Assembly (NCBI RefSeq): GCF_036365525.1
Contig: NW_027141721.1
Span: forward strand, 124,001 to 188,000
Length of the DNA: 64,000 nt
Source: Heterodontus francisci
Lineage: Eukaryota
Direction: 5' to 3'
Part shown: positions 1,232-61,353 of the stretch, piece by piece
Numbering within the stretch: the stretch's first letter is position 1
Layout of the letters: the number at the start of each line of letters is the position of its first letter
Translations under genes and position numbers: made by a program
Notes under the pieces: generated by a model
What the model was told of the DNA's origin: nothing
The model's database searches: none
The model's input: only the letters and a program-made list of their open reading frames with translations

Positions 1232-1376
1232 TCACAGACTCTGCACTCACTGACCCGTGTGTAAATCACACAGTCCTGGACCAGCCCTGGAGGAGCAGCG
1301 ATTGTGATGTCACTGGGTGCTCCGGTCAGGAGAAGTGTGATGATAATCTTGCTCAAGGATGGTACAGATTTAAAAG
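1232..1376 (+). CDS. Copy 1 D8C exon a
   Basis: ctcag|tc ... aaaag|gtaatg; TDSALTDPCVNHTVLDQPWRSSDCDVTGCSGQEKCDDNLAQGWYRFK. Confidence 0.9.
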
Positions 1377-26466: not shown

Positions 26467-26505
26467 AGTTTTTGCCATGTTTCCTTGCATTCTAGTTACA
26501 CTGTG
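26467..26505 (-). other. Recombination signal sequence, 23-bp spacer
   Basis: Minus strand CACAGTG (26505-26499), 23 nt, GCAAAAACT (26475-26467). Confidence 0.85.
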
Positions 26506-33562: not shown

Positions 33563-33596
33563 ATGTGGACTCTGCTGATCATTCTGGGTTACCTGA
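33563..33596 (+). CDS. Copy 2 signal-peptide exon (exon starts 33548)
   Basis: AAGATGT context; MWTLLIILGYL a|gtgagt, phase 1 matching exon 35523. Confidence 0.85.
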
Positions 33597-36500
33597 GTGA
33601 GTAACTTTCATTCTCGACAAAGTTCACCCCCAGTACAACTAGAACAAGCTGTGTTTATTCAAACCGTTACATAGAATAATCTCCCAAGATGTTGCACAGA
33701 AATCTGATTGAAGAAATGTCTGACACGGCAGGGAAGGAGATGACTGGAGGGCTGACTGTTAGTTTAAAAGAGCAGACGGAGGTGGAGAGGCAGAAAGGTT
33801 TAGGAGGCTAGACATCTTGAAGCCACATCAGACACTGCTGGAGGAAAGGGAGTGGAGGGAAGTTCTACAGGAGGCTTGGGTCAGAGAAACAGAGAGTTGG
33901 TGAAGATTACAGAAATGAGGTGGGAGAGGGTGGAGAGGTCATGAAAGAATTTGAACAGGAAGATGGAAGTTGTACATCAAAGGCGTTTGCAGCTGTGAAC
34001 CAATGTGGGTCAGAGAGCACAGGGGTGATGTGTGACTTAAACTTTCTGCAAGATAACATACAACAGCAGTGTGTTGGAGGAGACCTGACTTCTGGAAAGT
34101 GGAAGCTGGGAGGCTGGCCAGGAGTGGATTAGAAGATTTGACTGTCTAGAAGGTAGAGGGTTTTTGGTAGAGGATTGGCTGAGGCAAAATCAGTGATGGT
34201 GGATATTACGGAGGTTGTAATTGGATGTCCTTGTGATGAGGAGGCTACAGGGAAGGAAGCTGGGCACAGTCGGAAGCTGATGAGAAATTGGAGAGGGACA
34301 AGATAGATTCTCGGGATACCCTAGAGGTAACAGTGCTGGAGTGGGTAGGGAAGACACTGCAGGAGATTCTCTGGCTGAGACTAGACTGGGTTGAGTGGAA
34401 ATAGGCCAGAGCAGTTCCACCCAGCTGGACATGGAAGGAGTGGTGTTGGCAGAGGGTAGTGTGGTGAATTGTGTCAAAGACTGCCGACAATTCGAGAAGG
34501 ATGATCTGAAACAGTATTGCTGACTTGGCTCTTGCAGCTTCACTGCTGCTCAAACCCTTTACGAGTTATTTGGTAACTCTAGACTTGACTATTCCAAAGA
34601 CCTCCTGGCTGATCTCTCACATTCCACCTTCCGTTCATTGAGGTCATCCAGTATGATACTGCCCAAGTCCCGTTCACTTTCATCTCCGTGCTCACTGACC
34701 TACACTGGCTCCCGTTTCAGCAAGGCCTGGATTTCAATATTCTCACAATCGTTTCCAGATCCTTCTATCACCTCGCCGTTCCCTACCGCTGACAGAATCT
34801 CCAACCCCACAACCCTGGAGATCTCTGCGCTCCTCTAATTCAGGCCTCTTGAATATTCCCGATTCGAATCCCTTCCACCATTGGCAGCTGTGCCTTCACC
34901 TGCCGAGGCTTAACGCCATGGAATTCTATCCCTCAACTTCTCCGTCTCTCCACCTCTCTTTCATCCTTTCAGACACTCCATAAAATCTACCTCTTTGACA
35001 GAGCATTTGGCCACCTGCCCGACCAGCTGCTTCTGTGGATCGGTGTCAGTTCGGGATGGTAACACACCGATGAAGTGCTTTGGGACATTTTATTACATCA
35101 AAGGCACTACAGAAATGCAGGTTGTTGTTGGTTTTGAGACTACACGTTCCCTCTCCAGGACCCACCAGTCACACTGGGTCGTTTGTGCTCCACCTGGCAG
35201 TTCTCGCTCCTCCTCCACTTTACATTTTTCCTACTGGGATGAAGTGAAGCTGAGATATTTACTGCTTTCTGTTACCTGAGAGCTGGTGGTTAATCTAGAA
35301 TAGGGAGGACTGTCTGTGAGCAGTGAGTTAGAAGGGGAGGCTGAGCTGGGAAACAGATGGAAACCCAGTTTAGAGAAGGAGGACATTTTCCAGCTTCAAT
35401 CTGGGGGGTTTTGACCAGGGCGGAGGGTGAAACTGAGACTATTGGTATTTCGGGAGGGTACAAGGCGCTGTGTAACATTAACTGCACTTTATATTAACAT
35501 TAAACATCTTTCTGTCACTCAGTCACAGACTCCACACTCACTGACCCGTGTGTAAATCACACAGTCCTGGACCAGCCCTGGAGGAGCATCGATTGTACTG
35601 GGACTGAGTGCTCCGGTCAGGTGAAATGCGATGATAATCTTGCTCAAGGATGGTACAGATTTAAAAGGTAATGTAAAGGAACAAATTCTGGGTAAATCAG
35701 TTAATGAGGGAGGAGTAAGGGATTTCCCCCAGTTTCTGGTACTCTCTGCTGGTACCAGTCTCTCTAAAATTTAATATTTACCATCAGTTCAGGGGCTGAC
35801 TCTGTGATTATTGTTTCAGTTCTGGTGGATGGAAGATTCCGGAGACTGCTGTCCCAGATTTTCACTGCTCTACACATGTTACAGGCTGGTTACAGGGTAA
35901 TTTCAGCCTTTATAATATCAGATTTATATTCACTGTTCAGCACTGTTCACATGGGTTACAGTCTTCAATATTTATAAACTCTCATTTCAGGTTCCCATCC
36001 CAGCGTGGAACAGGGGGAAGTAACGAGGACAGTTTGTTTATACTGGCGTGGAAATCCCTGCCACAAGGTCCATGAGATAAAGATCAAAAACTGCAGCAGT
36101 TACTTCGTTTATGATCTGAAGTCGTCGTTTTATTGCGCTGCATATTGTACAGGTACATTGATGCTTCTATATCATCCAGAGGGTGATTCTGGGATGTCCC
36201 GTGTCACCCACAGAAATGAGACTGTTTACTCACTCCCCTCCTTATTGTTAGGGACACAGTGAATAAAGGATCTGAAACACAAAGTGTACTTCACTGAAAC
36301 TCTAGGGAACTGAACCAGACTCTGCTGTCTCTGTCCATCAGACACTCTGATCCCTGCAGTGTTCATGGCTCACGTCAGGTCCCCACTGCAGTGCTGGATA
36401 CCTCACACTCCCTCTCCAGGAAACAATGTTGACGAGGAGTAGGATTGGATAGACGAGGCTTTGATAAAGATGAAAATTTGACATTGTCTGGACTCGAGTA

Positions 36501-39500
36501 CTAAATACACGAGCTCTTTGTGTTTTCTCCACTCTGCCCTCTTCCTTTATTACAGATCCAGAGACTGTCGCAACTGAGGAACCCGAGGAACAATCAACTC
36601 GAGAATCCGCTAGAGGATCATCGTCTACCCCAGCGGTGTCTGGAACATCAGGTATCCCCCTTGTGGGGTCCATTCGAAACAGATTCCACACCCAATGTTA
36701 CATCATAGAAGATCAGTCCTGGAGATCATCCAGTCTCTTACTGAGGGAGTGAGATGGAGTGACTGCGGGAAGTGGGATGGAGTGACTGAGGGGAGTGGGA
36801 TGGGGTGACTGAGGGAAGTGGGATGGAGTGACTGAGGTGAGTGGGATGGGGTGACTGAGGGGAGTGGGATGTGTTGACTGAGGGGACTGGGATGCAGTGA
36901 CTAAGGAGAGTGGGATGATGCAATTGAGGGGAGTGGAATACAGAGACTGAGGGGAGTGGGATGTCGTGACTGAGGGGAGTGGGATGCACTGACTGAGAGA
37001 AGTGGGATGCACTGACTGAGAGGAGTGGGATGCACTGACTGAGGAGAGTGGGATGCAGTGACTGAGGGGAATGGGATGCAGTAATTGAGGGGAGTGGGAT
37101 GTAGTGACGGAGGAGAGTGGGATGTAGAGGCTGAGAGGATTGGGATGCAGTGACTGGGGAGTGGAATGCACTGATTGAGGGGTGTGGGATGCAGTGACTG
37201 AGGGGAGTGGGCTGCAGTGACTGAGCGGAGTGGCATGCACTGATTGAGGGGAGTGGGATGCACTGATTGAGGGGAGTGGGATGCAGTGACTGAGAGGAGT
37301 GGGATGCAGTGGCTGAGGGGAGTGGGATGGGGTGACTGAGGGGAGTGGGATGTGGTGATTGAGGGCAGTGGGTTGCAGTGACTGAGGGGAGTGGGATGCA
37401 GTGACTGAGGGGAGTGGGATGATGTAATTGAGCGGAGTGGGATGCAGTAATTCAGGGGAGCGCGATGTAGAGACTGAGGGGAGTGGAATGCACTGATTGA
37501 GGGGTGTGGGATGCAGTGACGGAGGGGAGTGGGATGATGTAATTGAGGGGAGTGGTATTTAGTGACTAAGGGGATTGAGAAGATGTGATTGCGGGGAGTG
37601 GGATGCAATGACTGAGGGCAGTGACATTTTATGACTGGGGAAAATGTAATGCAGTTCCTGTGCCAACTGGGATGCGGTGAGTGTGGACAGTGGATTGTCT
37701 CACAATGGTTTTTATATACACTAGCATCTGTGATTTACTGTACTCTAATCTATCCAGTTCGAGCTTTCTCTCACTCCTTCTCTCCCCCATGTTTCTCTTC
37801 CTTTATTACACATCCAGAGACTTCAACAACTGCAAGAACCAAGGAGCAAACAACTCCACACTCCATTGAGAAATCACCATCTAACCCAATCGATATTTTC
37901 ACCTCAGGTGTCAGTATTGTGTTGATCAATCAGGACGGGTTGACTCTTGCACTGACTGCCTGATTTGGGTGAATGGAATCTACCGCACAGGAAGAGGCCA
38001 CTCGGCCCCTCTTGCTACTCCTCTTCATCCAACCTTATCCTTCTTTTCCTTTCTCCCTCAGGTGTTTAACCAGATATACCTTAGATTTCATTGCCCTGGA
38101 CAATTCAGGATTAATTCTACATTCTCACTACACCTTGATGTACTTGTCCATAGTTCACTGAAGGCAGCAGCACAGGTAGATCATGTGGTTTGGAAGGCAT
38201 ATGGGATACTTGCCTGTCTTAGCCGAGGCACAGAATATAAGAGCAGGGCGGTTATGATGGAGCTGTACAAAACGCTAGTTTGGCCACAGCTGGAGTACTG
38301 AGAACAGTTCTGGGCACCACACTAAAGGAAGGATGTGATTGCACTGGAGAGGGTGCAGAGGAGATTCACCAGGAGGTTGCCTGGGCTGGAGCATTTCAGC
38401 TGTGAAGAGAGGCTGGATAGGCTATGGTTGTTTTCCTTAGAGCAGAGAAGGCTGAGGGGGGACCTGATTGAGGTATACAAAATTATGCGGGGCATTGATT
38501 TGTTAGATTGGAAGAAACTATTTCCCTTAGCGGAGGGGTCAGTAACCAGGGGGAATAGACTTAAGATAAAAGGCAAGAGGTTTATAGGGGATTTGAGGAA
38601 ACAGATTTTCACCCTGAGGGTGGTTGGAATCTGGAACACACTGTCTGAAGAGGAGGTAGAGGCAGGAACCCTCACAACATTTAATAAGTATTTAGATAAG
38701 CACTTGAAACGCCGCAGCATACATGATTACGGGCCAAGTGCTGGAAAATGGGATTAGAATAGCTCCATGCTTGATGATCGGCATGGACACGATGGGCCGA
38801 AGGGCCTGTTTCCATGCTGGATAATTGTATGAGTCTAGGGCTGTGACGCACTTTTGAGTAAAGAGGCTTCCTCTGAAATCACCACTGGATTTACTTGTGA
38901 CTGTTTTATTTTCTATCCCTCTCCCTCCACCCTCCTCTCCCACTGCCTCTTTCTGCACTTACTGTCAGTATCTCTTTTGCTCTCCGTGTATCTTTCTCTT
39001 TATATCTCTATATTTGCTCTCTCTCTCTCTGCCATTTTCACTCAGTCTCTGTCGATCTCTATCTGACAATTTTGTTTTCCCTCTGTCTCTCTCTTTATCT
39101 CTGTAACTCACTGCTCTCCCCCTTTCGCTTCTTCTCTCGCTGTCTGTATCTGTTGCTCTCACTCTCGGACTCTTTCTTGATCTCTCACATTTTCTATCGT
39201 TCTCTTTCTTCTCATTTTTCTCTCCCTCTGTTGCCCTCTTTCACTCTGTCTCCCACTCTCACTGTCTCTAACTCTCACACATTATCTCTCACTCGCAGTG
39301 ACTGAGGGCAGTGGGATGCATTGACTGAGGGGAGTGGGATGCATTGACTGAGGGGAGTGGGATGTAGTGACTAAGGGGAGTGCAATGTAATGGCAGAGGA
39401 TGGTGGGGTGTAGTGACTGAGAAGAGTGGGATAGACTGATGGAGGTGAATGGAATGCAATGACTGAGGGGACTGGGATGGAGTGGCTGAGCGGAGTTGTG

Positions 39501-42500
39501 TGAAAGGTTTGAGGGGAGTGGGTTGCAGTGAATGAGGGGAGTGGAATACTGTGGAATGAGGGGAGTGGAATACTGTGACTGATATTAGATCCAGAGAGTG
39601 AGGGAGAGTGGGAGGCAGTGACGGAGGGGCTTGGGATTCCGTGACTGAGGGCAGTGCGATGGCCTGACTGAGGGAGTGGGATGTTGTGACTGAGGGAAGT
39701 GGGAGTGCGAGTTAGAGCCTGAGAGTAGTGGGATGTAGTGACAGAGGGAGGTGGGATGCAGTGACTGAGGGGAGTGGGATAGACTAACGGAGCTGAGTGG
39801 GATGTAGTGACCTATGGGAGTGGGATGCGGTGACTGAGGGGAGTGGAATGTAGAGACCGAGGGTTGTGGGTTACACAGGCTGAGGGGAGTGTAATACAGT
39901 GACTGAGGGGAGTGTGATACAGTGACTGAGGGGAGTGGGATACAGTGACTGAGGGGAGTGGGATACAGCGACTGAGGGGAGTAGGATACAGCGACTGAGG
40001 GGGAGTGGGATACATCGAGTAAGGGGCATGGGACACAGCGACTGAGGGGAGTGGGATACAGTGACTGAGGGGAGTGGGATACAGTAATGTAGTGATCAGG
40101 ATGGAAGATGATGGATTTATAAAGATTGATATCTCACTTTCTCCTGACACTAGTACCATCCTGTTGAAATGTTGTGTTTTTCTCCATCTCTCACTCTGCA
40201 ATGTTTCCCTCCCTTTCTAACAGAGCCCATGACTTCCCAAACTCAGGAATCTGAGGAACAATCGACTGGAGAATCCATTGAGGTTTCATCCTCTATCCTA
40301 GTGGGCTCTGGAACCCCAGGTATCTGCCGTGCCGGATTATAATTACAGAATGATGGAATCAGAGACTGGTTACAGCACAGAAAGAGGCCATTCAGCCCAT
40401 CGTCACCGTGCCAGCTCTCTGCCAGTGCAATCCACCTACTCCCACTTCTGCCATTTCCCCATCACCCTGCAGATTGTTTCTCCTATGATAATTTTCCAAT
40501 TCCCTTTTGAAAGCCTCAATTGAACCTGCCTCCAGTGCACTCTCAGGCATTGCATTCCAGACCCTAACCACTCGCTGTGTGAAAAGATTTTCCTGTCTCT
40601 GTTGCTACTTTTACCAATCACCTAAAACCGGTGTCCTCTGGTTCTGGATTCTCCCACCAATGGGAACAGTTTCTCCCTGTCTGCTCTGTCCACATCCCTC
40701 GTGATTTTGAAAACCTCGATCAAATCTTCTCTTAATCTTCTCTTCTCCAGGGAGAACAGCCCCATCTTCTCCAATCTATCCAAGTAACTGACGTCCCTCA
40801 TCCTGGGAAACATTCTTGTAAATCATCTCCGCACCCTCTCGAATACCTTAACATCCTTTCTAAGTATTAACCGCTCTCTCGACCTGTCTTGCCACCTTCA
40901 ATGATCTGTGCACATGTGCCCCCAGGTCCCTCTGCCCCTGCACCCCTTTACAATTGTATCCTTTATTTTATATTGCCTCTCCTCCTTCTTCCGACCAAAA
41001 TGCATCACTTCACAATTCTCTGCATTAAATTTCATCTGCCACTTGCCTGCCCATTCCACAGGTCTGCTTAAGTCCACTTGAAGTCCATCACTATCCTTCT
41101 CACTGTTCACAACACTTCCAGGTCTTGTGCCCTCCACAAATAAGGTTGTTGAGCTGCAGGCGCAGATAGCCACGTGGAAATATGCTGTTGTGGCAATAAC
41201 CGAGTCCTGGTTCTAAGAGAGGCAGGACTGGGTAGTGAATATTCCTGACTACAAGGTGTTCAGGAAAGAGAGGGGAGGAAGGAAAGGAGGAGGGGCATCA
41301 GTATTGTTTAAGGGGAGAATTACAGTGCTGGAAGGAGATGATGTCGCAGAGGAACCAAGGATAGAATCCATCAGATTAAAGTGAAACAACGAAAGAAATA
41401 CCATGACCTTTCTGGGTGTATGTTCTAGGCCAACAACTAGTGGAAAAGATATAGATGAACAGATTTGCATAGAGCAACCAAGAGATGCAAGAGTTAAAGT
41501 GTAGATATATCATTGGGCAATAATTATCTGAATATAGTCTGGAATAGTAATAGTGTAAAGGGCACAGAGGGACAAGAGTTTCTCGAATATGTTCAGGAGA
41601 ATTTCCTACGTCAGTTTGTTTCCAGTCCAACGAGGAAGGAGGCATTGTTGGATCTGATTCTGGGAAATGAGGTTGGACAAGTGAATTAAGGGTCAGCCGG
41701 GGAACATTTGGGGACAGTGACCAGCGTATCATATGGTTTAGGTTGGCAATGGAAAGTGACAAGGAGAAATCCAGAGGAAAGATAATTCATTGAGGGAGAA
41801 CCAATCTCAATGGAGTGAGAACAGATCTGACCCAAATAAACTGGAATCATATTACAGAGTCCCACACTGTGATGCCTGAAGTGCTCATTCCAAGAGACGC
41901 ATCCAGTCTCTTAATGATGGAGTGTGGGGCAATGATAGAGGGCAGTTGGAAAACAGTGACTGAGGGGAGAGGGATCTCGTGACTGAGGGGGGCGGGGTGG
42001 GATGCAGTGACCGAGGGGATTGGGATGCAGTGACTGAGGGCAGCGGGACATAGTGACTGAGGGCAGTGGGACATAGTGACTGAGGGCAGTGAGATTTAGT
42101 GACTGAAGGGAGTGTGATGTATTGACTGTGCGCATTGGGATACAGTGACTGAGGAGATTGGGATACAGTGTCTGAGGAGATTGGGATACAGTGTCTGAGG
42201 GGAGTGTGATGCAGCAACTGAGGGGAGTGTGATACAGTCAATGAGGGGAGAGCGATACAGTGACTGAGGGAACGGTGATACAGTTACTGAGGGAAGTGTG
42301 ATACACTGACTGAGGGAAGAGCGATACAGTGAGAAAGGGGAGTGTGATACAGGGACTGAGGGAGTGTGACATAGTGACTGAGGGGAGAATGATACAGCGA
42401 CTGAGGGGAGAGTGATACAGCGACTATGGCAGTGTGATACAGTGACTGAGGGGAGTGTGATACAGGGACTGAGGGGAGTGGAATACAGTGACTGAAGGGA

Positions 42501-51500: not shown

Positions 51501-54500
51501 GTCGTTGTGACTGAGGGCAGTGGGTTATAGTGACTGAGGGCAGTGGTATGTATTCACTGTGCAGAGTGGGATGTGGTAACTGCAGAGTGTGGGATGCAGT
51601 GACTGAGGTGAGTGGGATACAGTGACTGAGGTGAGTGTGATACAGTGACTGAGGGCAGTGGGATACAGTGACTGAGAGGAGTTGATACAGTGACTGAGAT
51701 ATTGTGATGCAGTGACTGAGGTGAGTGTGATGCAGTGACTGCTGGGAGTGTGATACAGTGACTGAGGGGTGTGTGACGCAGTAATGTCGTGAACAGGATG
51801 GAAGATAATGGTTTTATAAAGATTGTTATCTGTCATTCTCCGGACACGAGCACCATCCTGTTGACCTGATGTGTTTTTCTCCATGTCTCACTTTGCAATG
51901 TCTCCCTCCCTTTAATACAGAACCCGTGACTTCCCAAACGCAGGAATCCGAGGAACAATCGACTAGCGAATCTACTGAGGTTTCATCCTCCACCCCAGCG
52001 GTCTCTGGAAGCTCAGGTACCTGCCTTGTGGTGTTATCATCGCAGAATCATGGAATCAGAGACTGGTTACAACACAGAAAGAGGCCATTGAGCCCATCGT
52101 CACTGTGACAGCTGTATGCCTGTGCAACGCACCTACTCCCAGTCCTGCCAATTCCCCATCTCCCAGCAGATTGATTCTCCGATGACAATTTTCCAATTCC
52201 CTTTTGAAGGCCTCAATTGAACCTGCCTCCAGCACACTCTCAGGCAGTGCATTTCAGATCCTAACCACTCTCTGTGTGAAAAGATTTTCCTGTCTCTGTT
52301 GTGACTTACATCACTCACCTAAAACCGGTGCCCTCTAGTTCTGGATCCTCCCACCAATGGGACTGAGGGGAGTGGGACATAGTTACTGAGGGGAGAGTGA
52401 TGCAGTGACTGAGGGGAGAAGGTTGCACTGACCGAGGGGAGTGGGATATAGTGACTGAGGGCAGTGGGACATAGTGACTGAGGGTAGTGTGATGCAATGA
52501 CAGAGGAAGTGTGATACAGTGACAGAGGGGAGTGTGATACAGTGTGTGAGGGGGGTGTGATACAGTGACTGAGGGGAGTATGATACAGTGACTGAGGGGA
52601 GTGTGATGCAGTGAGTAAGGGATTGTGATACAGTGACTGAGGGGATAGCGATACAGTTACGGAGGGAGTGTGATACACTGACTGAGGGGAGAGGGATACA
52701 GTGACTGAAGGGAGTGTGATACAGTGACTGAGGGGTGTGGGATGCAGTGACTGAGGGGAGTAGGATACAGTCACTGTGGGGAGTGGGATGCAGCGACTGA
52801 GGGTAGTGTGATACGGTGACTGAGGGGAGTGTGATGCAGTGACTGAGGGGAGTGAGATACACTGACTGAGGGGAGTGGGATACAGTGACTGAAGGGAGTG
52901 TGATCCAGTGACTGAGGGGTGGGGCATGCAGTGACTGAGGGGAGTAGGATACAGTCACTGAGGGAAGTGGGATGCAGCGACTGAGTGTAGTGTGATACAG
53001 TGACTGAGGGGAGTATGATACATTCACTGAGGAGACTGGAATGCAGCGACTGAGTGCACTGTGATAGAGTGACTGAGGGGTGTGGGATGCAGTGACTGAG
53101 AGAGTGTGATGCAGTGACAGAGGGAAGTGGGATACAGTGACTGAGAGACTGTGATACAGTGACTGAGAGAGTGTTACACAGTGACAGAGGGAAGTGGGAT
53201 ACAGTGACTGAGGGGTGTGTGATACTGTGACAGCGGGGAGTGCGATACAGTGACTGAGGGAGTGTGATACGGTGACTGGGGGAGAGTGCTACAGTGAGTG
53301 ATGGGTGTGTGATACAGTGACTGAGGGGAGCATGATACAGTGACTGAGGGGAGTGTGATACAGTGACTCAGGGAGCGTGATACAGTGACTGAGGGGAGTG
53401 TGATACAGTTTCGGAGGGGCGTGTGATACACTGACCGAGGGGAGTGGGATACAGTGACTGAAGGGAGTGCGATATAGTAACTGAGGGTAGTATGATACAG
53501 TGACTGAGGGGATTGTGACACAGTGTCAGACGGTAGCATGATACAGCCACTGAGGGGAGTGTGATGCAGCGACTGAGGGTAGTGTGATACAGTGTCTGAG
53601 GGGGGTGTGATACAGTGACTGAGGGTTGTGTGATACAATGACAGAGGAAGTGTGATACAGTGACAGAGGGGAGTGTGATACAGTGTGTGAGGGGGGTGTG
53701 ATACAGTGACTGAGGGGAGCATGATACAGTTACTGAGGGGAGTGTGATACAGTGACTGAGGGGATAGCGATACAGTGACTGAAGGGAGTGTGATACAGTG
53801 ACTGAGGGGTGTGGGATGCAGTGACTGAGGGTAGTGTGATACGGTGACTGAGGGGAGTGTGATGCAGTGACTGAGGGGAGTGTGATAAACTGACTGAGGG
53901 GAATGGGATACAGTGACTGAAGTGAGTGTGATACAGTGACTGAGGGGTGTGGGATGCAGTGACTGAGGGGAGTAGGATACAGTCACTGAGGGGAGTGGGA
54001 TGGAGCGACTGAGGGGAGTGTGTTCCAGTGACTGAGGGGAGTTGGATACAGTCACTGAAGAGACTGGAATGCAGCGACTGAGTGGAGTGTGATAGAGTGA
54101 CTGAGGGGAGTGGGATACGGTGACTGAGAGAGTGTGATACAGTGACAGAGGGAAGTGGGATACAGTGACTGAGAGAGTGTGATACAGTGACTGAGAGAGT
54201 GTGACACAGTGACAGAGGGAAGTGGGATACAGTGACTGAATGTGTGGGATACAGTGACTGAGGGGATTGTGATACTGTGACAGCGGGGAGTGTGATACAG
54301 TGACTGAGAGAGTGTGATACGGTGACTGGGGTAGAGTGATACAGTGACTGTGGGGAGTGTGATACACTGTCTGAGGAGAGTGGGATGCAGTGACTGAGGG
54401 GAGTGTGATGCAGTGCCTGAGGGGTGTAGGATACAGTGAACTGAAGGGAGTGTGATCCAGTGACTGGAGGAGTGTGATACAGTGACTGAGGGGAGTGTGA

Positions 54501-57500
54501 TACAGTGTCTGAGGGTAGTATGATACAGTCACTGAGGGGAGTGCGATGCTGCGACTGAGGGTAGTGTGATACAGTGTCTGAGGGGGATGTGATACAGTGA
54601 CAGAGGGTAGAGTGATACAATGACAGAGGAAGAGTGATACAGTGACAGAGGGGAGTGTGATCCAGTGGGTGAGGGGAGTGTGATGCAGTGACTAAGGGGA
54701 GCATTATACAGTCACTGAGGGGAGTGTGATACAGTGACTCCGGGAGTGTGATACAGTGATTGAGGGCAGTGCGATAAAGTTACGGAGGGGAGTGTTATAC
54801 ACTGACTGAGGGGATTGGGATACAGTGACTGAAGGGAGTGTGATACAGTGACTGGAGGAGTGTGACACAGTGACTGAGGGGAGTGTGATACAGTGTCTGA
54901 GGGTAGTATGATACAGTCACTGAGGGGAGTGCGATGCAGCGACTGAGGGTAGTGTGATACAGTGTCTGAGGGGGATGTGATACAGTGACAGAGGGTAGAG
55001 TGATACAATGACAGAGGAAGAGTGATACAGTGACAGAGGGGAGTGTGATACAGTGGGTGAGGGGAGTGTGATGCAGTGACTAAGGGGAGCATTATACAGT
55101 GACTGAGAGGAGTGTGATACAGTGACTCCGGGAGTGTGATACAGTGATTGAGGGGAGTGCGATAAAGTTACGGAGGGGAGTGTTATACACTGACTGAGGG
55201 GATTGGGATACAGTGACTGAAGGGAGTGTGATCCAGTGACTGGAGGAGTGTGATACAGTGACTGAGGGGAGTGTGATACAGTGTCTGAGGGTAGTATGAT
55301 ACAGTCACTGAGGGGAGTGCGATGCAGCGACTGAGGGTAGTGTGATGCAGTGTCTGAGGGGGATGTGATACAGTGACAGAGGGTACAGTGATACAATGAC
55401 AGAGGAAGAGTGATACAGTGACAGAGGGGAGTGTGATACAGTGGGTGAGGGGAGTGTGATGCAGTGACTAAGGGGAGCATTATACAGTGACTGAGGGGAG
55501 TGTGATACAGTGACTCCGGGAGTGTGATACAGTGATTGAGGGGAGTGCGATAAAGTTACGGAGTGGAGTGTTATACACTAACTGAGGGGATAGGGATACA
55601 GTGACTGAAGGGAGTGTGATACAGTGACTGAGGGCTGTGGGATGCAGTGACTGAGGGGAGTAGGATACAGACACTGAGGGTTTGGGATGCAGCGACTGAG
55701 GGTAGTGTGATACAGTGACTGAGGGGAGTGTGATACAGTCACTGAGGAGAGGGGAATGCAGCGACTGAGGGGAGTGGCATACAGTGACTGAAGGGAGTGT
55801 GATACAGTGACTGAAGGGTGTGGGATGCAGTGACTGAGGGGAGTAGGAAACAGTCACTGAGGGGAGTGGGATGCAGCCACTGAGGGTAGTGTGTTACAGT
55901 GACTGAGGGGAGTATGATACAGTCACTGAGGAGAGTGGAATGCAGCGACTGAGGGGAGTGTGATAGAGTGACTGAGGGGAGTGTGATACAGTGACTAAGG
56001 GGAGCATTATACAGTGGCTGAGAGAGTGTGATACGGTGACTGGGGGAGAGTGATACAGTGACTGTGGGGAGTGTGATACGCTGTCTGAGGAGAGTGGGAT
56101 GCAGTGACTGAGGGGAGTGTGATGCAGTGTCTGAGTGGTGTAGGATACAGTGAACTGAAGGGAGTGTGATACAGTGACTGGGGGAGTGTGATACAGTGAC
56201 TGAGGGGAGTGTGATACAGTGTCTGAGGGTAGTATGATACAGTCACTGAGGGGAGTGCGATGCAGCTACTGAGGGTAGTGTGATACAGTGTCTGAGGGGG
56301 ATGTGATACAGTGACAGAGGGGAGAGTGATACAATGACAGAGGAAGAGTGATACAGTGACAGAGGGGAGTGTGATACAATGGGTGAGGGGAGTGTGATAC
56401 GGTGACTAAGGGGAGAATTATACAGTGACTGAGGGGAGTGTGATACAGTGACTCAGGGAGTGTGATACAGTGATTGAGTGGAGTGCGATAAAGTTACGGA
56501 GGGTAGTGTTATACACTGTCTGAGGGGATTGGGATACAGTGACCGAAGGGAGTGTGATTCAGAGACTGAGGGGTGTGGGATGCAGTGACTGAGGGTAGTA
56601 GGATACAGTCACTGAGGGGAGTGGGATGCAGCGACTGAGGGTAGTGTGATGCAGTGACTGAGGGGAGTATGATACAGTCACTGAGGAGAGGGGAATGCAG
56701 CGACTGAGGGGAGTGGGATACAGTGACTGAAGGGAGTGTGATACAGTGACTGAGGGGTGTGGGATGCAGTGACTGAGGGGAGTAGGAAACAGTCACTGAG
56801 GGGAGTGGGATCAGCGACTGAGCATAGTGTGATGCAGTGACTGAGGGGAGTATGATCCAGTCACTGAGGAGAGTGGAATTCAGTGGCTGAGGGGAGTGTG
56901 ATAGAGTGACTGAGGGGAGTGGGATACAGTGACTGAGGTGAGCATGATACAGTGAAAGAGGGAAGTGGGATACAGTGACTGAGAGAGTGTGATACAGTGA
57001 CTGAGAGAGTGTGATACAGTGACAGAGGGAAGTGGGATACAGTGACTGAATGTGTGGGATACAGTGACTGAGGGGTGTGTGATACTGCGACAGCGGGGAG
57101 TGCGAAACAGTGACTGATAGAGTGTGATACAGTGACTGGGGGAGAGTGATACAGTGACTGGGGGAGAGTGATACAGTGACTGAGGGGAGTGTGATACACT
57201 GACTGAGAGAGTGTGATACAGTGACAGAGGGAAGTGGGATACAGTGACTGAATGTGTGGGATACAGTGACTGATAGAGTGTGATACAGTGACTGGGGGAG
57301 TGTGGTACATTGACTGAGGGGAGTGTGATACAGTGACTGATAGAGTGTGATACAGTGACTGGGGGAGTGTGGTACATTGACTGAGGGGAGTGTGATACTC
57401 TGTCTGAGTAGAGTGGGATGCAGTGACAGAAGCGAATATAATGCAGTGACTGAGTGGAGTGTGATACATTGAATGAGGGGAGTGTGAGACTCTGTCTGAG

Positions 57501-60500
57501 GGGAGTGGGACACAGTGAACTGAAGGGAGTGTGATACTGTGACTGGGGGAGTGTGATACAGTGACTGAGGAGAGTGTGATACACTGTCTGAGGGGAGTGG
57601 AGTGCAGTGACTGAAGGGAATATAATGCAGTGACTGAGGGGAGTGTGATACAGTGCCTGAGGGGCGTGTGTTGCAGTGACTGAGGGGAGTGTGATACAGC
57701 GACTGAGGAGAGTGTGATACAGTGACTGAGGGGAATGTGATAAAGTGACTGAGGTGAGTGTAATGCAGTGACTGAGGGGACTGTGATAGAGACTGAGGGC
57801 AGCATGATTCTCAAACTCAGGAATCCGAGGAACAATTGACTAGCGAATCTACTGAGGTTTCATCCACTACCCCAGCGGGCTCTGGAAGCTAAGGTATCTG
57901 CTTTGTGGGGTTATCATCGCAGAATCATGGAATCAAAGACTGGTTACGGCACAGAAAGTTTCTGTTCAGCCCATCTTCACCGTGCCAGCTCTCTGGCAGT
58001 GCAACTCACCTACTCCCACTCCTACCATTTTCCTGTCGCCCTGCAGATATTTTCTGCCATGACAATTATCCAATTCCCTTTTGAAAGCCTCAATTAAACC
58101 TGCCTCCAGCACACTCTCATGCAGTGCATTTCAGATCCTAACCACTCACTGTGTGAAAAGGTTTCCCTGCCTCTGTTGTGACTTTTACCACTCACCTAAA
58201 ACCGTTGCTCTCTAGTTCTGGATCCTCCCACCAAGAGGAACAGTTTTTCCCTGACTACTCTGTCCAGTTCCCTCTTGATTATGAACATCTTGATCAAATC
58301 TCCTCTTAATCTTCTCGTCTCCAGGGAGAACAGCCCCAGCTTCTCCGATCTATTCATGTCACTGACGTCCCTCATCCCGGGAACCATTCTGGTAAATCTT
58401 CTCTGCACCCTCTCAAATACCTTAACATCCTTCCTAAGTATTGACCGCTCTCTCGACCTGTCTTGCCACCTTCAATGATTTGTGCACATGTCCCCCCAGG
58501 TCCCTCTGCCCCTGCACCTCCTTTAGAATTGTAGCCTTTATTTTATATTGCCTCTCGTTCGTCCGACCAAAATGAATCACTTCACAATTCTCTGTGATAA
58601 ATTTCATTTGCCAGTGTCTGCCCATCCCACCAGCCTGTCTATGACCTCCTGACATCTATCACTGTCCTCCTCACAGTTCACAATACTTCCAGGTTTTTTG
58701 TCATCTGCAGATTTTGAAAGTGTGCCCTGTACGCCCCAGTCTTTGTCATTAATATACATCAGGAAAAACAGTGGTCTGAGCAATATTAGAGAGCAAAGCA
58801 CAGATGCACAGAGAATTAGGAGGGACAGATAACACTGGAGTCGATAAGAGTATCGTATTAGACGGGGGCAGTGGAAGAGGAAAGGAGATAAGCTGTCAAT
58901 TCAGTTTAATGTGTGTGTATATGGATGCACGGACAGTGGTAAATAAGGTTGTTGAGCTTCAGGCGCAGATAGCCACGTGGAAATATGATGTTGTGGCAAT
59001 TACAGGGTCCTGGCTCGAAGATGGGCAGGACTGGGTAGTGAATATTCCTGACGACAAGGTGTTCAGGAAAGGGAGGGGAGGAAGGAAAGGAGGAGGGGTA
59101 TCAGTATTGATTAAGGGGAACATTACAGTGCTGTTTTCTTTTCTCTCTCTTGTTCTCACTCATTCCAGATCTCCCTCACTCTTTTCTGTCTCACTCCTGT
59201 CGCCTACCCTCCTTTTCTCTCATTCCTGCTCTCTGTTGTTCTCTGACTCCACTTTCCCCCTGTCGTTTCGCTGATCACTTTGATAATCTCCTAAGTTTTC
59301 TCTGTTAGTTTTTGTTTCTTGTCGGAGTAGTAACTGATTCTGCAGCCGATGATATCTTGTGTCTCCCCTCAGTAAAGGCTGGTATACATTGATTCAGTGT
59401 GGCGAGGGAGTTAGATTACATACGAGAGGAGGTTCTGTGTTAAAACACTTCTGTCCACTCATCCAGCGTTCTGAATCCCAGTGAAATTCCTCTTGTCTTT
59501 ATTTGACCCTCTCAGACTCGGGGATTCCGTCTACTCCCGAGGAACCTCCCGACTCCCAGCCTGTTTCTGATGACGGTGGGAACGTTTCAGATCCTCCACA
59601 TTTCAGGAATATTAAATCCCTCCTCCTGTCTCAGTCTGGCACAAATATATCAGGACCGAGGGCCTCCAAACAGCTGTGTGATCGTTCTGTGTAGGGAAAC
59701 CCATCGTTCTCAATCTCTCTCTCTGCCTTGTCTGTGCTGTCAGACAAGAGTTGCAGTCACTTGTGTTCAGTATGAGTGGAATCATTGGGAAACAAAGAAA
59801 CGTAAACGTTCAGAAATTCCTTCAGAAATATCTTTGAGCTTCTATCTCACATCCCTCTCTCTGTAACTCTCAGTTTTATCTCTGTCTCTCTTTTTCTCCT
59901 TTATCTGCCTTTCACACGCATATATAAATATATTTCATTTCTGTAACCGCCTCTCTCCTATGTGGCTCTCAGATTCTCCAGCTCCCTCTTTCACCTCACT
60001 CTGTCTCCCACTCTCTCTGATGTTCTGTCTCCCTGTCTGTCTCTCTGACTCTCACTTTCTCTCTCTGTCTCTCTCACAGATGCTCTTTGTCTGTCTCTCT
60101 GTCTTTGTCTTTGTCAGAGGGACAGAGAGCATCAGAGAGAGAGAGAGAGAGTGAGAGTGAGAGACAGAGACAGAGAAAAGGGCAGTGAGACCGGAGTAAA
60201 CACGGAATGCAAATGATCTGGGGAGATGGAACAAGAGGCAACGGAGAAGAGAGTGCAGGATAGAGGATGATAACACAGGGAGGGCAGATTAGAGACAAGA
60301 CGAGTTGAGATAGAGAGAATAACAGAGACAGATGAACAAACGAGTGGATGACAAACTGGAGGAAAGAGAGTTTAAATTAGAGAGGCGAGATCATTCGAAA
60401 TACGTCCCGTGCCCTGTGCTAAACTCTGGGTGTATTTAACCTGTTGATGTTGTGACTGTTGTGTTTAGATACCAAATACAAGAGGATTAATGTGAAGATC

Positions 60501-61353
60501 ACTTCAATGACTGATCTGGATGATGAAACTGCAAAGAGAATCGTTGTGGAGAGGGTAAGAGACTGCACTGTACTGAGGAGAAACACGGGAGACAACAGAT
60601 CCTCCCTCTCACTGTCTGTATTCACTGAATGGGAACTCCAGGTCATTATTTAAACAGCTCTAATTTCCCTCTGCTTATCTTCTGGTCCCCCAGATCAGGC
60701 TTGTGAGGGGTTGAATGGGCTTCCTCCTGAGCCTGTGTGAAAGGCTCGAGAGCGGGTGAGGGGGCTGAATGGCCTTCTCCTGTTCCTGTGTAAGAACTCG
60801 AAAGAGGGGCTGAATGGCCTCCTCCTGTTCCTGTGTAACAGATTCGAGGGGATGAATGGCCTCCTCGTTGTACGGTAACCTCTCTCTGATCTTCCCTCTC
60901 ACTCTCCCCATTCTCTCTTTATGTCCTTTCTATCTCTGTCTCTTTCTCTGCCTCGCTCACCCACTCTGTATTTCTCTTTCTTTGTCTTTCTTTCTGTCTG
61001 TGTCTGTCTCTCCCTCACTGCATCTCTGACGACCTCTCGCTCTCACGCCCTCTGTTTCTCTACCTCTGTCTCAATCCCTGTAGCTCTCCCACCCTCCCTC
61101 TCCATCTCTCCCTCTATCTGAGTATCTTTGCCTCACCCTGTCTCTCACTGTCTTGTCCCCACCCTCTCTCCCGATCTCTGTCTGTATCCTCTCTGTCTCT
61201 TTCTATTCACTCCTCCCCTTGCAGTAATACTCATTGTTTCTCCTCTCTGCGATGCAGATGAAGCACATGTTCCAGGATCAGTGTCCACACACGAAGCTCG
61301 AATTGGATCCAGAAGACGTTCAGTGCTCGGCTAGTGAGCCTGTGGAAGTGTGA
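33563..61353 (+). CDS. D8C secreted protein, copy 2 (about 443 aa). Exons 33563-33596, 35523-35667, 35820-35896, 35991-36152, 36556-36651, 40224-40319, 42923-43018, 45672-45767, 47098-47193, 50403-50498, 51921-52016, 59516-59575, 60469-60554, 61258-61353
   Basis: Contiguous open frame through GT-AG junctions: MWTLLIILGYLITDSTLTDPCVNHT..., D8C, seven 32-aa repeats, C-terminal domain, TGA. Confidence 0.85.
33640..35130. mobile_element. L2 fragments, antisense (about 33640-34545) then sense (about 34550-35130)
   Basis: Minus ILLELSAVFDTIHH..GTALAYF; plus SRLDYS region and L2 3' end. Confidence 0.75.
35523..36152 (+). CDS. Copy 2 D8C exons a-c (35523-35667, 35820-35896, 35991-36152)
   Basis: Constant offset of 34291 from copy 1; ...WRSIDCTGTECSGQVKC...WLQGSHPSVEQGEVTRTVCLYWRGNPCHKVHE...YDLKSSFYCAAYCT. 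Confidence 0.9.
36556..36651 (+). CDS. Copy 2 stalk exon R1
   Basis: DPETVATEEPEEQSTRESARGSSSTPAVSGTS; AG/GT intact. Confidence 0.85.
36738..37625 (+). repeat. 23-bp minisatellite
   Basis: Collinear with 2448-3700. Confidence 0.95.
37812..37907 (+). pseudogene. Stalk pseudo-exon R2 (acceptor AG>AC)
   Basis: ctttattacaC|atccagagact; 96 nt, open frame PETSTTARTKEQTTPHSIEKSPSNPIDIFTS; GT donor retained. Confidence 0.7.
38130..38835 (+). mobile_element. CR1 3' portion
   Basis: ALERVQRRFTRRLPGL...RRLRGDLIEVYKIM. Confidence 0.95.
40224..40319 (+). CDS. Copy 2 stalk exon R3
   Basis: ctaacag|ag...ccag|gtatct; EPMTSQTQESEEQSTGESIEVSSSILVGSGTP. Confidence 0.75.
40345..41850. mobile_element. CR1 antisense/sense composite within stalk cassette
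   Basis: Paralogous to 6988-8200 and 43047-44785. Confidence 0.85.
42923..43018 (+). CDS. Copy 2 stalk exon R4
   Basis: EPVTYQTQESEEQSTAESTEGPSSIPAGSGSS; AG/GT intact. Confidence 0.8.
43047..44785. mobile_element. CR1 antisense/sense composite within stalk cassette (longest version)
   Basis: Antisense RT 3' end then sense endonuclease (YDVVAITESWL, PTRKEALLDLVLGN). Confidence 0.85.
45672..45767 (+). CDS. Copy 2 stalk exon R5
   Basis: EPETSQTQESEEQSTRESTEVSSSTPAGSGSS; AG/GT intact. Confidence 0.8.
47098..47193 (+). CDS. Copy 2 stalk exon R6
   Basis: EPVTSKTQESEEQSTRESTEVSSSTPAGSGSS; AG/GT intact. Confidence 0.8.
50403..50498 (+). CDS. Copy 2 stalk exon R7
   Basis: EPVTSKTQESEEQSTRESTEVSSSTPAGSGSS; AG/GT intact. 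Confidence 0.8.
51921..52016 (+). CDS. Copy 2 stalk exon R8
   Basis: EPVTSQTQESEEQSTSESTEVSSSTPAVSGSS; AG/GT intact. Confidence 0.8.
57812..57893 (+). pseudogene. Dead stalk exon R9 (paralogue of 6881-6961)
   Basis: 5' end and acceptor lost; TAA at 57890-57892. Confidence 0.75.
57920..59132. mobile_element. CR1 composite, paralogue of 6988-8200
   Basis: Collinear, near-identical ORFs. Confidence 0.9.
59516..59575 (+). CDS. Copy 2 linker exon
   Basis: DSGIPSTPEEPPDSQPVSDD; one silent change versus copy 1. Confidence 0.7.
60469..60554 (+). CDS. Copy 2 C-terminal domain exon 1
   Basis: DTKYKRINVKITSMTDLDDETAKRIVVER|gtaaga. Confidence 0.8.
61258..61353 (+). CDS. Copy 2 terminal coding exon
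   Basis: MKHMFQDQCPHTKLELDPEDVQCSASEPVEV*. Confidence 0.8.
   Translation: MKHMFQDQCPHTKLELDPEDVQCSASEPVEV

What the first reader, a model, noticed from the sequence alone, without database searches (positions are those of the whole stretch)
33563..61353. Secreted ZP-less uromodulin/GP2 'decoy module' on an extensible acidic stalk, a candidate shark innate-immune or mucosal protein family
Seen: a 14-coding-exon open frame reading signal peptide, one D8C/D10C domain, seven 32-aa S/T/E repeats, and a ~60-aa C-terminal domain, with no ZP module and no hydrophobic C-terminus. A tandem paralogue lies 34 kb upstream. Known: in UMOD and GP2 this domain is the branch that carries the glycan bound by the bacterial adhesin FimH, and it is displayed on ZP polymers or a GPI anchor. 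Inference: here the module is freed from the ZP scaffold and displayed as a soluble head on a rod-like stalk, possibly multimerised by the C-terminal domain (a collectin/ficolin-like layout). Automated pipelines may already label such genes GP2-like or uromodulin-like, but I know of no functional description of this architecture.
Basis: partly seen in the sequence, partly recalled or inferred. Interest (0 to 1): 0.85.

Follow-up and report, generated by a model that had tools for sequence, protein, structure and literature searches.

The report
Shark ZP-less D10C stalk gene
A real, intact horn-shark gene encodes a secreted protein with a uromodulin/GP2-type D10C head, a long acidic Ser/Thr stalk built from seven duplicated exons and a small conserved tail, but no filament-forming ZP module; it belongs to a large shark and ray family for which I found no published study.

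Summary
An open frame runs from the ATG at 33563 to the TGA at 61353 over 13 constant exons and 2 cassette exons, all with AG/GT sites. It reads signal peptide, one D10C/D8C domain (Pfam PF23283; GP2 and UMOD are the only significant solved relatives), seven 96-nt phase-1 exons of 32 aa each, then a 60-aa hydrophilic tail. No EGF, ZP or hydrophobic C-terminus occurs anywhere in the 64 kb. RNA contigs from one sample show the predicted e1-e2, e2-e3 and e4-r1 junctions, but they carry paralogue differences. Expression is therefore shown for the family, not for this copy. The 3' end rests on RefSeq models and on conservation of the tail across sharks and rays.

The protein is secreted and ZP-less. 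The full bipartite 'decoy module' is absent: there is no beta-hairpin and the C3-C6 disulfide is lost. The GP2-N65-type sequon is present here but in only 34% of family D10C copies. Multimerisation and an immune role are untested.

The 'paralogue 34 kb upstream' is the second D10C of a two-D10C gene. The scan found the same family on other DNA of this genome (s1-872196). No literature on it was found. Verdict: new variant of a known kind.

The parts
33563..33596 (+). Exon 1: ATG and signal-peptide core (MWTLLIILGYL), ends in phase 1
   Evidence: Sequence. It is the only hydrophobic piece of the protein. The same N-terminus occurs in RefSeq relatives of many sharks. An RNA contig joins 33596 to 35523 with GT..AG ends.
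35523..35667 (+). Exon 2: N-terminal third of D10C (C1, C2, an extra Cys pair, and the NHT sequon aligned to GP2 N65)
   Evidence: PDB phmmer matches GP2 7p6r at E 4.9e-6, aligning DPCVNHTVLDQPWRS to DPCQNYTLLDEPFRS. The e2-e3 joint appears in all three runs.
35820..35896 (+). Exon 3: middle of D10C (C4 kept, C3 replaced by Val)
   Evidence: Alignment of the paralogue P0171 to GP2 and a weak UMOD alignment. Splice sites and phase checked.
35991..36152 (+). Exon 4: C-terminal part of D10C (C5, C7-C10; C6 replaced)
   Evidence: Pfam PF23283 at E 4.7e-7, 30.3 bits against a cut-off of 27. GP2 and UMOD match at E 1.5e-5 to 1e-4. The e4-r1 joint is seen in RNA contigs of X1 and X2.
36556..36651 (+). 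Stalk repeat exon 1 (96 nt, phase 1-1; DPETVATEEPEEQSTRESARGSSSTPAVSGTS)
   Evidence: Covered by spliced RNA contigs.
37818..37907 (+). Optional 90-nt phase 1-1 cassette exon (ETSTTARTKEQTTPHSIEKSPSNPIDIFTS)
   Evidence: Good acceptor and donor. Included in the RefSeq paralogue model P0023 at 93% identity. Its use in this gene is not shown.
40224..52016 (+). Stalk repeat exons 2-7 (each 96 nt, phase 1-1): 40224-40319, 42923-43018, 45672-45767, 47098-47193, 50403-50498, 51921-52016. Each lies about 139 nt after a 23-bp minisatellite array
   Evidence: Alignment A1, exact limits and translations, minisatellite arrays.
57798..57893 (+). Degenerate eighth repeat copy: the acceptor region is overrun by the minisatellite and there is an in-frame TAA. 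Probably not an exon
   Evidence: The same decayed copy lies at 6867-6962 in the upstream gene, so it predates the gene duplication.
59516..59575 (+). Optional 60-nt phase 1-1 exon (DSGIPSTPEEPPDSQPVSDD)
   Evidence: Splice sites. 100% match to RefSeq models P0009 and P0174, but skipped in P0171.
60469..60554 (+). Tail exon 1 (DTKYKRINVKITSMTDLDDETAKRIVVER)
   Evidence: Identical to the tail of RefSeq P0171. The tail family is conserved at the extreme C-terminus in 31 of 235 relatives from sharks and rays.
61258..61353 (+). Tail exon 2 with stop (MKHMFQDQCPHTKLELDPEDVQCSASEPVEV, then TGA)
   Evidence: 100% nucleotide identity to the upstream gene's copy at 10339-10434. Hydrophilic, with no GPI or TM signal.
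36740..57799 (.). 23-bp G-rich minisatellite arrays (unit ACTGAGGGGAGTGGGATGCAGTG) filling the stalk introns: 36740-37623, 39295-40085, 41953-42783, 44868-45533, 46112-46959, 47538-57799
   Evidence: TRF, strong GC skew. The same array lies at 115-1120 and 2449-6868 in the upstream gene.
1232..10434 (+). 3' part of the upstream tandem paralogue: second D10C (1232-1376, 1529-1605, 1700-1861), a single repeat exon (2265-2360), a decayed repeat (6867-6962), the optional exon (8585-8644) and tail exons (9553-9638, 10339-10434)
   Evidence: Matches RefSeq P0171 (360 aa: two D10C, one repeat, tail) exon for exon.

Best explanation
What is shown:
- This is an intact member of a chondrichthyan gene family, in the horn shark Heterodontus francisci or a very close relative.
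- The product has a cleavable signal peptide and one D10C domain of the uromodulin/GP2 type.
- A stalk of 224-274 residues follows, about 42% Ser/Thr, about 20% Asp/Glu, with almost no aromatic residues. It is predicted disordered and is encoded by seven symmetric 96-nt exons plus up to two cassette exons.
- The protein ends in a conserved hydrophilic tail of about 55 residues.
- It has no EGF, ZP, transmembrane or GPI element. It therefore cannot polymerise the way UMOD and GP2 do and should leave the cell as a soluble glycoprotein.

What is inferred:
- It most likely works as a soluble extracellular binding or decoy glycoprotein of epithelial secretions or body fluids.
- The folded D10C head is the functional end. 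It carries an N-glycan sequon at the position of the FimH-binding GP2 N65 glycan, and its surface loops vary between copies.
- The polyanionic, probably O-glycosylated or phosphorylated stalk holds the head away from the tail as a flexible spacer.
- The tail, with its near-invariant last cysteine, probably links chains to each other or to another component.

The family varies the number of heads (1 to more than 10) and the stalk length (1-7 repeats among the copies seen here). Stalk length changes by unequal exchange between the 23-bp minisatellite arrays that bound each repeat exon.
For: Gene anatomy:
- Open frame and canonical splice sites over 15 exons.

D10C homology, by four routes:
- Pfam.
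- PDB sequence search.
- AF2 model of the paralogue P0171, with D10C pLDDT 80-93.
- Structure comparison: Foldseek to GP2 7p6r gives TM 0.84 and rmsd 1.8; VIA-align gives Z 19.3.

Stalk:
- pLDDT about 30.
- Composition: 114 S+T, 54 D+E and 10 K+R out of 274 residues.

Absence of other modules:
- No ZP or EGF in the 64 kb.
- Only 12 of the 233 other fetched D8C proteins carry a ZP module, and none of the tail-bearing ones does.
- No hydrophobic stretch apart from exon 1.

Transcription:
- Spliced RNA contigs carry exactly the predicted e1-e2, e2-e3 and e4-r1 junctions.

Tail:
- Conserved at the extreme C-terminus from sharks to rays.
- 98.8-100% identical in nucleotides between the two in-window genes, against 91-96% for the head exons.

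Head features:
- The sequon aligns to GP2 N65. N65 carries oligomannose, and the N65A mutation abolishes FimH binding (PMC8930769).
- Variation among seven horn-shark D10C copies falls in discrete loops on an invariant scaffold.

Analogy:
- A related but ZP-bearing multi-D10C family in zebrafish protects against bacteria (PMC11415648).
Against: - No copy-specific RNA. The contigs carry paralogue differences and come from one sample of unknown tissue.
- The 3' end and the use of exons r2-r7 were not seen in reads. They rest on RefSeq models of paralogues and on conservation.
- No canonical AATAAA lies within 1.8 kb of the stop.
- The beta-hairpin that, together with D10C, forms the glycan-shielding groove of GP2/UMOD is absent. 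The N65-type sequon is present in only 34% of family D10C copies.
- dN/dS between the two in-window heads is 0.45, so there is no overall signal of positive selection.
- Tail self-association is unsupported: the complex prediction gave no answer, and the monomer model shows only one helix there.
- Tissue, ligand and modifications are all unknown.
Confidence: 0.55

Rival explanations
1. The heads are diversified protein-recognition domains, a germline-encoded soluble agglutinin or pattern-recognition repertoire. Binding would go through the variable D10C loops. The N-glycan would be incidental, and the protein would not be a passive glycan decoy.
For: - Variation among horn-shark copies clusters in the C1-C2 loop, the C4 region and the C5-C7 loop, on an otherwise invariant scaffold.
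- The N65-type sequon is missing from two thirds of family D10C copies.
- The family is large and tandemly amplified, with 1 to more than 10 heads per protein.
- UMOD D10C carries a known protein-binding epitope for Bence-Jones proteins (legend text in PMC8930769).
Against: dN/dS over the whole head is 0.45, from only 28 substitutions. No ligand is known. Only seven copies were compared. The variable loops were not mapped onto one face of the fold.
Confidence: 0.25
2. This particular copy is a silent or decaying duplicate. Only its paralogues are expressed, and the intact frame merely reflects recent duplication.
For: - RNA contigs over the D10C exons carry up to 14 differences from this copy (table 8).
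- No database protein equals a seven-repeat product.
- The nearest RefSeq model, P0177, uses another first exon and differs in repeats 1-2.
Against: - All 13 constant exons keep their frame and AG/GT sites. The one truly decayed repeat copy shows what decay looks like here.
- 17 contigs of X1 are at least 99% alike to the stretch, and an e1-e2 junction contig fits without any listed differences.
Confidence: 0.15
3. The acidic stalk is the functional part. It would be a secreted, Fam20C-type phosphorylated, calcium- or mineral-binding protein, analogous to SCPP or SIBLING proteins or to crystal inhibition by UMOD. The D10C would serve as a folding or targeting head.
For: 14 S-x-E/D motifs in 274 stalk residues, two per repeat (QESEE, RESTE). 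Net charge is about -44.
Against: Motif counting only. The exons are phase 1-1, not the phase-0 exons typical of SCPP genes. Head and tail are conserved across the family, while stalk sequence and length vary freely between species. No tissue data.
Confidence: 0.07
4. It is an ordinary GP2/UMOD-type gene whose EGF, ZP and anchor exons lie further downstream and were missed.
For: Only 2.6 kb lie between the stop and the window end. The 3' end was not checked with reads.
Against: - An in-frame stop lies in a well-formed terminal exon.
- The upstream gene has the same tail. It is followed by 23 kb holding minisatellites and TRBV-like segments on the opposite strand, then the next gene's start, with no ZP or EGF match.
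- Orthologous models in at least 12 shark and ray species end within 0-16 residues of the same tail.
- Pfam finds only D8C in them.
Confidence: 0.03

Closest known systems
Human GP2 and uromodulin (UMOD) branch / 'decoy module' (PDB 7p6r, 7pfp; PMC8930769)
   Same: Homologous D10C fold: about 40% identity, TM 0.84, VIA Z 19.3 on the paralogue model. Four of the five D10C disulfides are kept. There is an N-x-T sequon at the exact position of GP2 N65. The protein is secretory.
   Different: - No beta-hairpin, EGF domains, ZP module, consensus cleavage site or GPI signal, so no filament formation.
- The C3-C6 disulfide is lost and an extra Cys pair sits in the C1-C2 loop.
- The head is followed by an acidic Ser/Thr stalk and a new tail.
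Zebrafish omcin family (omc1-15; PMC11415648)
   Same: Lineage-specific, tandemly amplified fish genes with one to several D10C domains. omc5 loss lowers survival with E. coli, the only functional hint for fish D10C expansions.
   Different: Omcins keep EGF IV, the ZP module and a predicted GPI anchor, and were described as teleost-specific. The shark and ray family has none of these and ends in its own tail.
RefSeq models 'uromodulin-like', 'GP2-like', 'OIT3-like', 'mucin-5AC-like' or 'uncharacterized protein' of sharks and rays (e.g. H. francisci XP_067884563.1 = P0009)
   Same: Same family and same architecture. P0171 is the upstream gene of this window, and P0177 has a D10C identical to this gene's.
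   Different: These are automatic predictions only. Several are visibly mis-modelled, with transposon-derived read-through or a first exon lacking the signal peptide. None has seven repeats.
DMBT1 / salivary agglutinin (functional analogue, from general knowledge)
   Same: A secreted mucosal protein built of repeated Cys-rich heads separated by Ser/Thr-rich spacers. Copy number varies through exon-cassette duplication.
   Different: Its heads are SRCR domains, not D10C, and DMBT1 ends in CUB and ZP domains. There is no homology.
SEA domain of membrane mucins (MUC1 2acm_B; weak structural lead only)
   Same: The tail follows a mucin-like stalk and has a strand-helix-strand pattern. VIA-align gives Z 3.0, rmsd 3.4, 47 residues aligned to the C-terminal half of MUC1 SEA.
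   Different: Z 3 is at noise level. Pfam SEA does not hit any of 28 members. The tail is half the size of a SEA domain, and no transmembrane segment follows.

Membership tests
D8C/D10C domain family (Pfam PF23283, UMOD/GP2/OIT3) | Sequence match to the family profile above the curated cut-off | tested here: met
   Exon 4 alone scores 30.3 bits against a cut-off of 27. The paralogue P0171 scores 75 bits. GP2 and UMOD are the only significant PDB hits.
D8C/D10C domain family (Pfam PF23283, UMOD/GP2/OIT3) | D10C fold | tested here: met
   AF2 model of P0171, whose second D10C is encoded in this window: Foldseek to 7p6r gives TM 0.84 and rmsd 1.8; VIA gives Z 19.3. The joined product of this gene itself was not folded.
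D8C/D10C domain family (Pfam PF23283, UMOD/GP2/OIT3) | Ten cysteines forming C1-C8, C2-C9, C3-C6, C4-C10 and C5-C7 (PMC8930769) | tested here: not met
   C3 (GP2 C107) aligns to Val and C6 (C145) to Pro/Arg, so that pair is lost together. The other eight Cys align. Two extra Cys lie in the C1-C2 loop, so the count is again ten but the pattern differs.
GP2/UMOD bipartite FimH decoy module | Disulfide-stabilised beta-hairpin packed against D10C | tested here: not met
   The signal peptide runs straight into ...TDSTLTDPC (C1). No residues are available for a hairpin.
GP2/UMOD bipartite FimH decoy module | N-glycan sequon in the hairpin/D10C groove (GP2 N65 or UMOD N275) | tested here: met
   DPCVNHT aligns to GP2 DPCQN65YT. 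The UMOD N275 position has no sequon (YDLK). The sequon is present in 120 of 349 family D10C copies.
GP2/UMOD bipartite FimH decoy module | The glycan is high-mannose and binds FimH | not testable with these tools
   Needs glycoproteomics and binding assays.
ZP-module filament proteins (UMOD, GP2, omcins) | ZP-N/ZP-C module, with EGF domains in UMOD | tested here: not met
   tblastn with two frog uromodulins finds nothing but D10C exons in 64 kb. Pfam finds only D8C in 26 of 28 tail-bearing relatives.
ZP-module filament proteins (UMOD, GP2, omcins) | C-terminal hydrophobic GPI or TM signal | tested here: not met
   Highest 11-residue mean hydropathy in the tail exons is 0.53, against 2.07 in exon 1. 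No dedicated GPI predictor was available.
Mucins (gel-forming or membrane-tethered) | Pro/Thr/Ser-rich tandem repeats, usually in one large exon | tested here: inconclusive
   The stalk is 42% S+T but only 9% Pro and 20% acidic, and each repeat is a separate 96-nt exon. O-glycosylation was not testable.
Mucins (gel-forming or membrane-tethered) | VWD/CK domains, or SEA plus a TM segment | tested here: not met
   No Pfam hit. Only a noise-level structural resemblance of the tail to half a SEA domain.
   The stalk has no Gly-X-Y periodicity and the head is N-terminal. Oligomerisation is unresolved.

The most novel reading that the evidence does not exclude
Sharks and rays run a second, germline-encoded soluble recognition system built on the D10C fold. 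Hundreds of heads would carry hypervariable loops. Head number and stalk length would be shuffled by minisatellite-driven cassette exchange. The genes would be co-amplified with, and perhaps co-regulated inside, T-cell-receptor beta V arrays. The conserved tail would assemble them into multivalent agglutinins.
Probability: 0.15. Interest if true: 0.8.

Novelty: new variant of a known kind. Interest (0 to 1): 0.5.

Why it matters
In the characterised D10C proteins considered here (UMOD, GP2 and the zebrafish omcins), D10C is the outward-facing branch of ZP-module proteins. Its function has been read entirely in that context.

A large family conserved across elasmobranchs uses the same head without the ZP scaffold, on a length-variable polyanionic stalk with its own terminal domain. 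This shows that D10C is an autonomous extracellular module.

It also offers a natural system for asking two questions. What does D10C itself bind? Is glycan display, or the protein surface, the ancestral function?

The locus is a clean example of protein length evolving by exon-cassette duplication between intronic minisatellites. It is also an example of non-immune-receptor genes amplified together with TCR V segments.

Tried and rejected
- **Joined protein:** Exons were searched one by one by reference. The RefSeq paralogue P0171, whose tail is identical and whose second D10C is encoded in this window, served as proxy.
- **The look-up of encoding contigs:** The annotated locus and neighbours in other species could not be inspected.
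- **Complex prediction, tail x 2 copies:** no answer, score 0.10 against a mark of 0.32. This is evidence neither way.
- **Word-based search with the tail alone:** it found only horn-shark proteins, so it says nothing about the tail outside D10C proteins.
- **Pfam on the tail, stalk and exon 1:** nothing.
- **Structural search for the tail:** only Z of 3.5 or less, including SEA-domain halves, which is noise level.
- **dN/dS between the two in-window heads:** 0.45, so whole-domain positive selection is not supported.
- **Poly(A) signal:** the nearest canonical AATAAA is at 63179, so the 3' UTR end is undetermined.
- **The look-up of sequencing runs:** it gave only three small contig-only runs of one sample, with coded tissue and organism.
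- **Literature:** searches for D8C or uromodulin-like or GP2-like with shark, elasmobranch or Chondrichthyes terms found nothing relevant. A shark skin-mucus proteome paper does not mention such proteins.

Full report
**What is in the sequence**

The window is vertebrate DNA. It is rich in LINE fragments and in G-rich minisatellites that give it a strong GC skew.

- Exon 1 (33563-33596) starts at an ATG and reads MWTLLIILGYL.
- Exons 2-4 (35523-35667, 35820-35896, 35991-36152) encode a Cys-rich domain.
- Seven exons of exactly 96 nt follow, all in phase 1-1. Their acceptors (…TTTATTACAG|A) and donors (CAG|GTA) are nearly identical. They lie at 36556, 40224, 42923, 45672, 47098, 50403 and 51921, and each codes 32 residues of the type EPVTSKTQESEEQSTRESTEVSSSTPAGSGSS.
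- Two tail exons close the frame: 60469-60554 and 61258-61353, the latter ending in TGA.
- Two more symmetric phase 1-1 exons with good splice sites lie at 37818-37907 and 59516-59575. RefSeq models of paralogues use them.

A phase-by-phase check shows AG/GT at every boundary. The frame is open for 473 codons with both cassette exons, 443 without the first, and 423 without both. An eighth repeat copy at 57798-57893 has had its acceptor region overrun by the minisatellite and carries an in-frame TAA. The same wreck lies in the upstream gene at 6867-6962.

Exons were searched singly by reference.

**The head**

Exon 4 alone passes Pfam's cut-off for D8C_UMOD, at 30.3 against 27 bits. Against all solved structures, exons 2 and 4 hit only GP2 and uromodulin significantly, at E 5e-6 to 1e-4.

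RefSeq protein P0171 has its second D10C, its repeat and its tail encoded at 1232-10434 of this window. An AlphaFold model of it has D10C pLDDT 80-93. It superposes on the GP2 decoy-module crystal structure with TM 0.84, rmsd 1.8 Å and 40% identity, and VIA-align gives Z 19.3.

Compared with the published D10C description (PMC8930769), the shark domain differs in four ways.

- It keeps the C1-C8, C2-C9, C4-C10 and C5-C7 disulfides.
- It has lost C3 and C6 together (Val and Pro/Arg at GP2 107 and 145).
- It has gained a Cys pair in the C1-C2 loop.
- It lacks the beta-hairpin that, with D10C, makes up the 'decoy module'. The signal peptide runs directly into TDSTLTDPC.

The sequon DPCVNHT aligns exactly with GP2 DPCQN65YT. 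That site carries oligomannose, and mutating it abolishes FimH binding. However, only 120 of 349 D10C copies in the relatives I fetched have a sequon there.

**Stalk and tail**

The stalk comprises r1-r7 and the two cassette exons, 274 residues in all. It has 114 Ser+Thr, 54 Asp+Glu, 10 Lys+Arg, 24 Pro, two aromatic residues and 14 S-x-E/D motifs. In the model of P0171 the single repeat has pLDDT of about 30.

The 60-residue tail reads DTKYKRINVKITSMTDLDDETAKRIVVER|MKHMFQDQCPHTKLELDPEDVQCSASEPVEV. It is hydrophilic and matches no Pfam family.

A local jackhmmer search over the 235 relatives fetched finds the same tail in 31 proteins. It lies at the very C-terminus (0-16 residues from the end) in all but a few of these, including visibly mis-modelled ones. 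By the source names, these proteins come from Heterodontus, Scyliorhinus, Mustelus, Pristiophorus, Chiloscyllium, Carcharodon, Cetorhinus, Rhincodon, Heptranchias, Mobula, Hemitrygon, Hypanus, Leucoraja and Rhinoraja.

The last cysteine is kept in nearly all of them, whereas the earlier one (DQC) is absent in many. That pattern fits an intermolecular disulfide, but this is inference. The monomer model shows one confident helix at residues 319-337. The two-copy complex prediction returned no answer. Structural neighbours of the tail are at noise level (Z of 3.5 or less), although halves of SEA domains are among them.

Between the two genes of this window the tail exons are 98.8-100% identical in nucleotides. 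The head exons are 91-96% identical.

**No ZP, no anchor**

tblastn with two complete frog uromodulins (EGF + D8C + ZP) matches only the D10C exons anywhere in the 64 kb. The only hydrophobic segment is exon 1.

The upstream gene ends in the same tail. It is followed by 23 kb containing other minisatellites and TRBV-like V segments on the opposite strand, and then by the start of this gene. Of the 233 other D8C proteins fetched, 12 have a ZP module, and none of them has this tail.

**Is it expressed?**

The one run search gave three small contig-only runs of a single sample. I laid them on 33450-36720. They contain spliced contigs with joints at:

- 33596>35523 (GT..AG);
- 35667>35820, in all three runs;
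- 36152>36556.

These are exactly the predicted e1-e2, e2-e3 and e4-r1 junctions. There is no coverage of the introns between them, so the runs are RNA.

A 'goes back' joint (36121>35520) comes from transcripts of paralogues with tandem D10C domains. The longest contigs differ from this copy at up to 14 positions in exon 4. This shows that the family is transcribed and spliced as modelled, signal-peptide exon included. It does not show that this copy is.

I had no reads call left for the 3' exons. Their support is the RefSeq models P0009 and P0171 and the cross-species conservation above. No canonical poly(A) signal lies within 1.8 kb of the stop.

**Family and organism**

A full HMMER scan with exon 4 found 545 proteins at E of 1e-3 or less, many with 2-17 D8C stretches. 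A search with P0009 returned 95 proteins. Most are from sharks, rays and skates, several from characiform teleosts and two from frogs (ZP-bearing uromodulins). Pfam shows D8C only in all but a few of them. Their names are 'uncharacterized', 'uromodulin-like', 'GP2-like', 'OIT3-like' or 'mucin-5AC-like'.

Two Heterodontus francisci models tie the window to that species or a very close relative. P0171 matches the upstream gene's in-window exons. P0177 has a D10C identical to this gene's, but another first exon (33689-33796) and slightly different repeats. No database protein corresponds to a seven-repeat product.

**How it probably works**

Shown: it is a secretory, ZP-less, anchor-less protein with a D10C head, a disordered polyanionic stalk and a conserved tail. 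Stalk length differs between copies (1 repeat upstream, 7 here, 3-4 in RefSeq paralogues). Each repeat exon sits about 139 nt after a 23-bp minisatellite array, an arrangement that invites unequal exchange.

Inferred: it is a soluble extracellular binding or decoy glycoprotein.

- For a glycan-decoy reading: the GP2-N65-type sequon in this gene.
- Against it: the missing hairpin, and the absence of the sequon from two thirds of family heads.
- For direct recognition by the head: differences among seven horn-shark D10C copies fall in a few loops on an invariant scaffold.
- Weakening that: dN/dS between the two in-window heads is only 0.45, on 28 substitutions.
- A mineral- or calcium-binding role for the S-x-E-rich stalk cannot be excluded.

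The nearest functional precedent is the zebrafish omcin cluster, which protects against bacteria. Omcins keep EGF IV, ZP and a GPI anchor, and were described as teleost-specific.

**Novelty**

I found no paper on the chondrichthyan family. The scan itself has met it repeatedly in this genome. A search of the scan's notes for 'D8C' in this genome returns 29, and one follow-up on another piece (s1-872196) has the same reading.

I rate it a new variant of a known kind. The head is known; what is new is its ZP-free architecture with a new, unnamed terminal domain. The sequences are already in public databases as automatic predictions.

Noticed in passing
window 24827-25117 (-) and 26323-26643 (-): V-domain-like open frames (…YRQDPGKEPRLMFYS…LYFCAWS… and …STYYCGA…) lie between the two D10C genes on the opposite strand. 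The first matches TCR beta V domains best in the PDB (E 4e-11 to 1e-7). D10C genes and TRBV-like segments appear to have been duplicated together.
   Followed up: partly
window 115-1120, 2449-6868, 36740-57799: A 23-bp G-rich minisatellite (ACTGAGGGGAGTGGGATGCAGTG) fills the stalk introns of both genes and accounts for the strong GC skew. On the minus strand it produces long spurious ORFs (…PLSHCITLPSVTVSHSPQSLYHT…).
   Followed up: partly
window 14740-16714 and 17196-18836: Two other long minisatellites (37-bp and 33-bp units, about 50 copies each) lie in the intergenic region between the D10C genes.
   Followed up: no
window 33689-33796: RefSeq model P0177 starts in an open frame inside intron 1 (MLHRNLIEEMSDTAGKEM…) instead of the signal-peptide exon. 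The RNA contigs show e1 (33596) joined to e2, so that model's first exon is probably an artefact or a minor form.
   Followed up: partly
window 36121>35520 (read laying joint): RNA contigs that 'go back' from the end of D10C to its start, with 31 inserted letters coding …PPPDCEAVYC…. These are transcripts of tandem-D10C paralogues such as the upstream gene, present in the same sample.
   Followed up: partly
window 9553-9638 and 10339-10434 versus 60469-60554 and 61258-61353: The tail exons of the two genes are 98.8% and 100% identical in nucleotides, while the D10C exons are 91-96% and the introns 89-96% identical. This points to stronger constraint or gene conversion on the tail.
   Followed up: partly
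window 50499-50534 and 47194-47229: The frame stays open for 12 codons past the normal donor of repeats 5 and 6 (GTCHVGSSSQNH), up to a second GT. RefSeq model P0009 uses the equivalent extended donor in its last repeat, so this may be an alternative 5' splice site.
   Followed up: no
window 38335-38757, 40622-40813, 43321-43512, 58196-58408, 63248-64000: Fragments of LINE reverse-transcriptase C-terminal regions (…RVQRRFTRM.PGM…LGLFSLE.RRLRGDLIEV.KI…) recur once per stalk cassette. They were duplicated along with the repeat exons.
   Followed up: no
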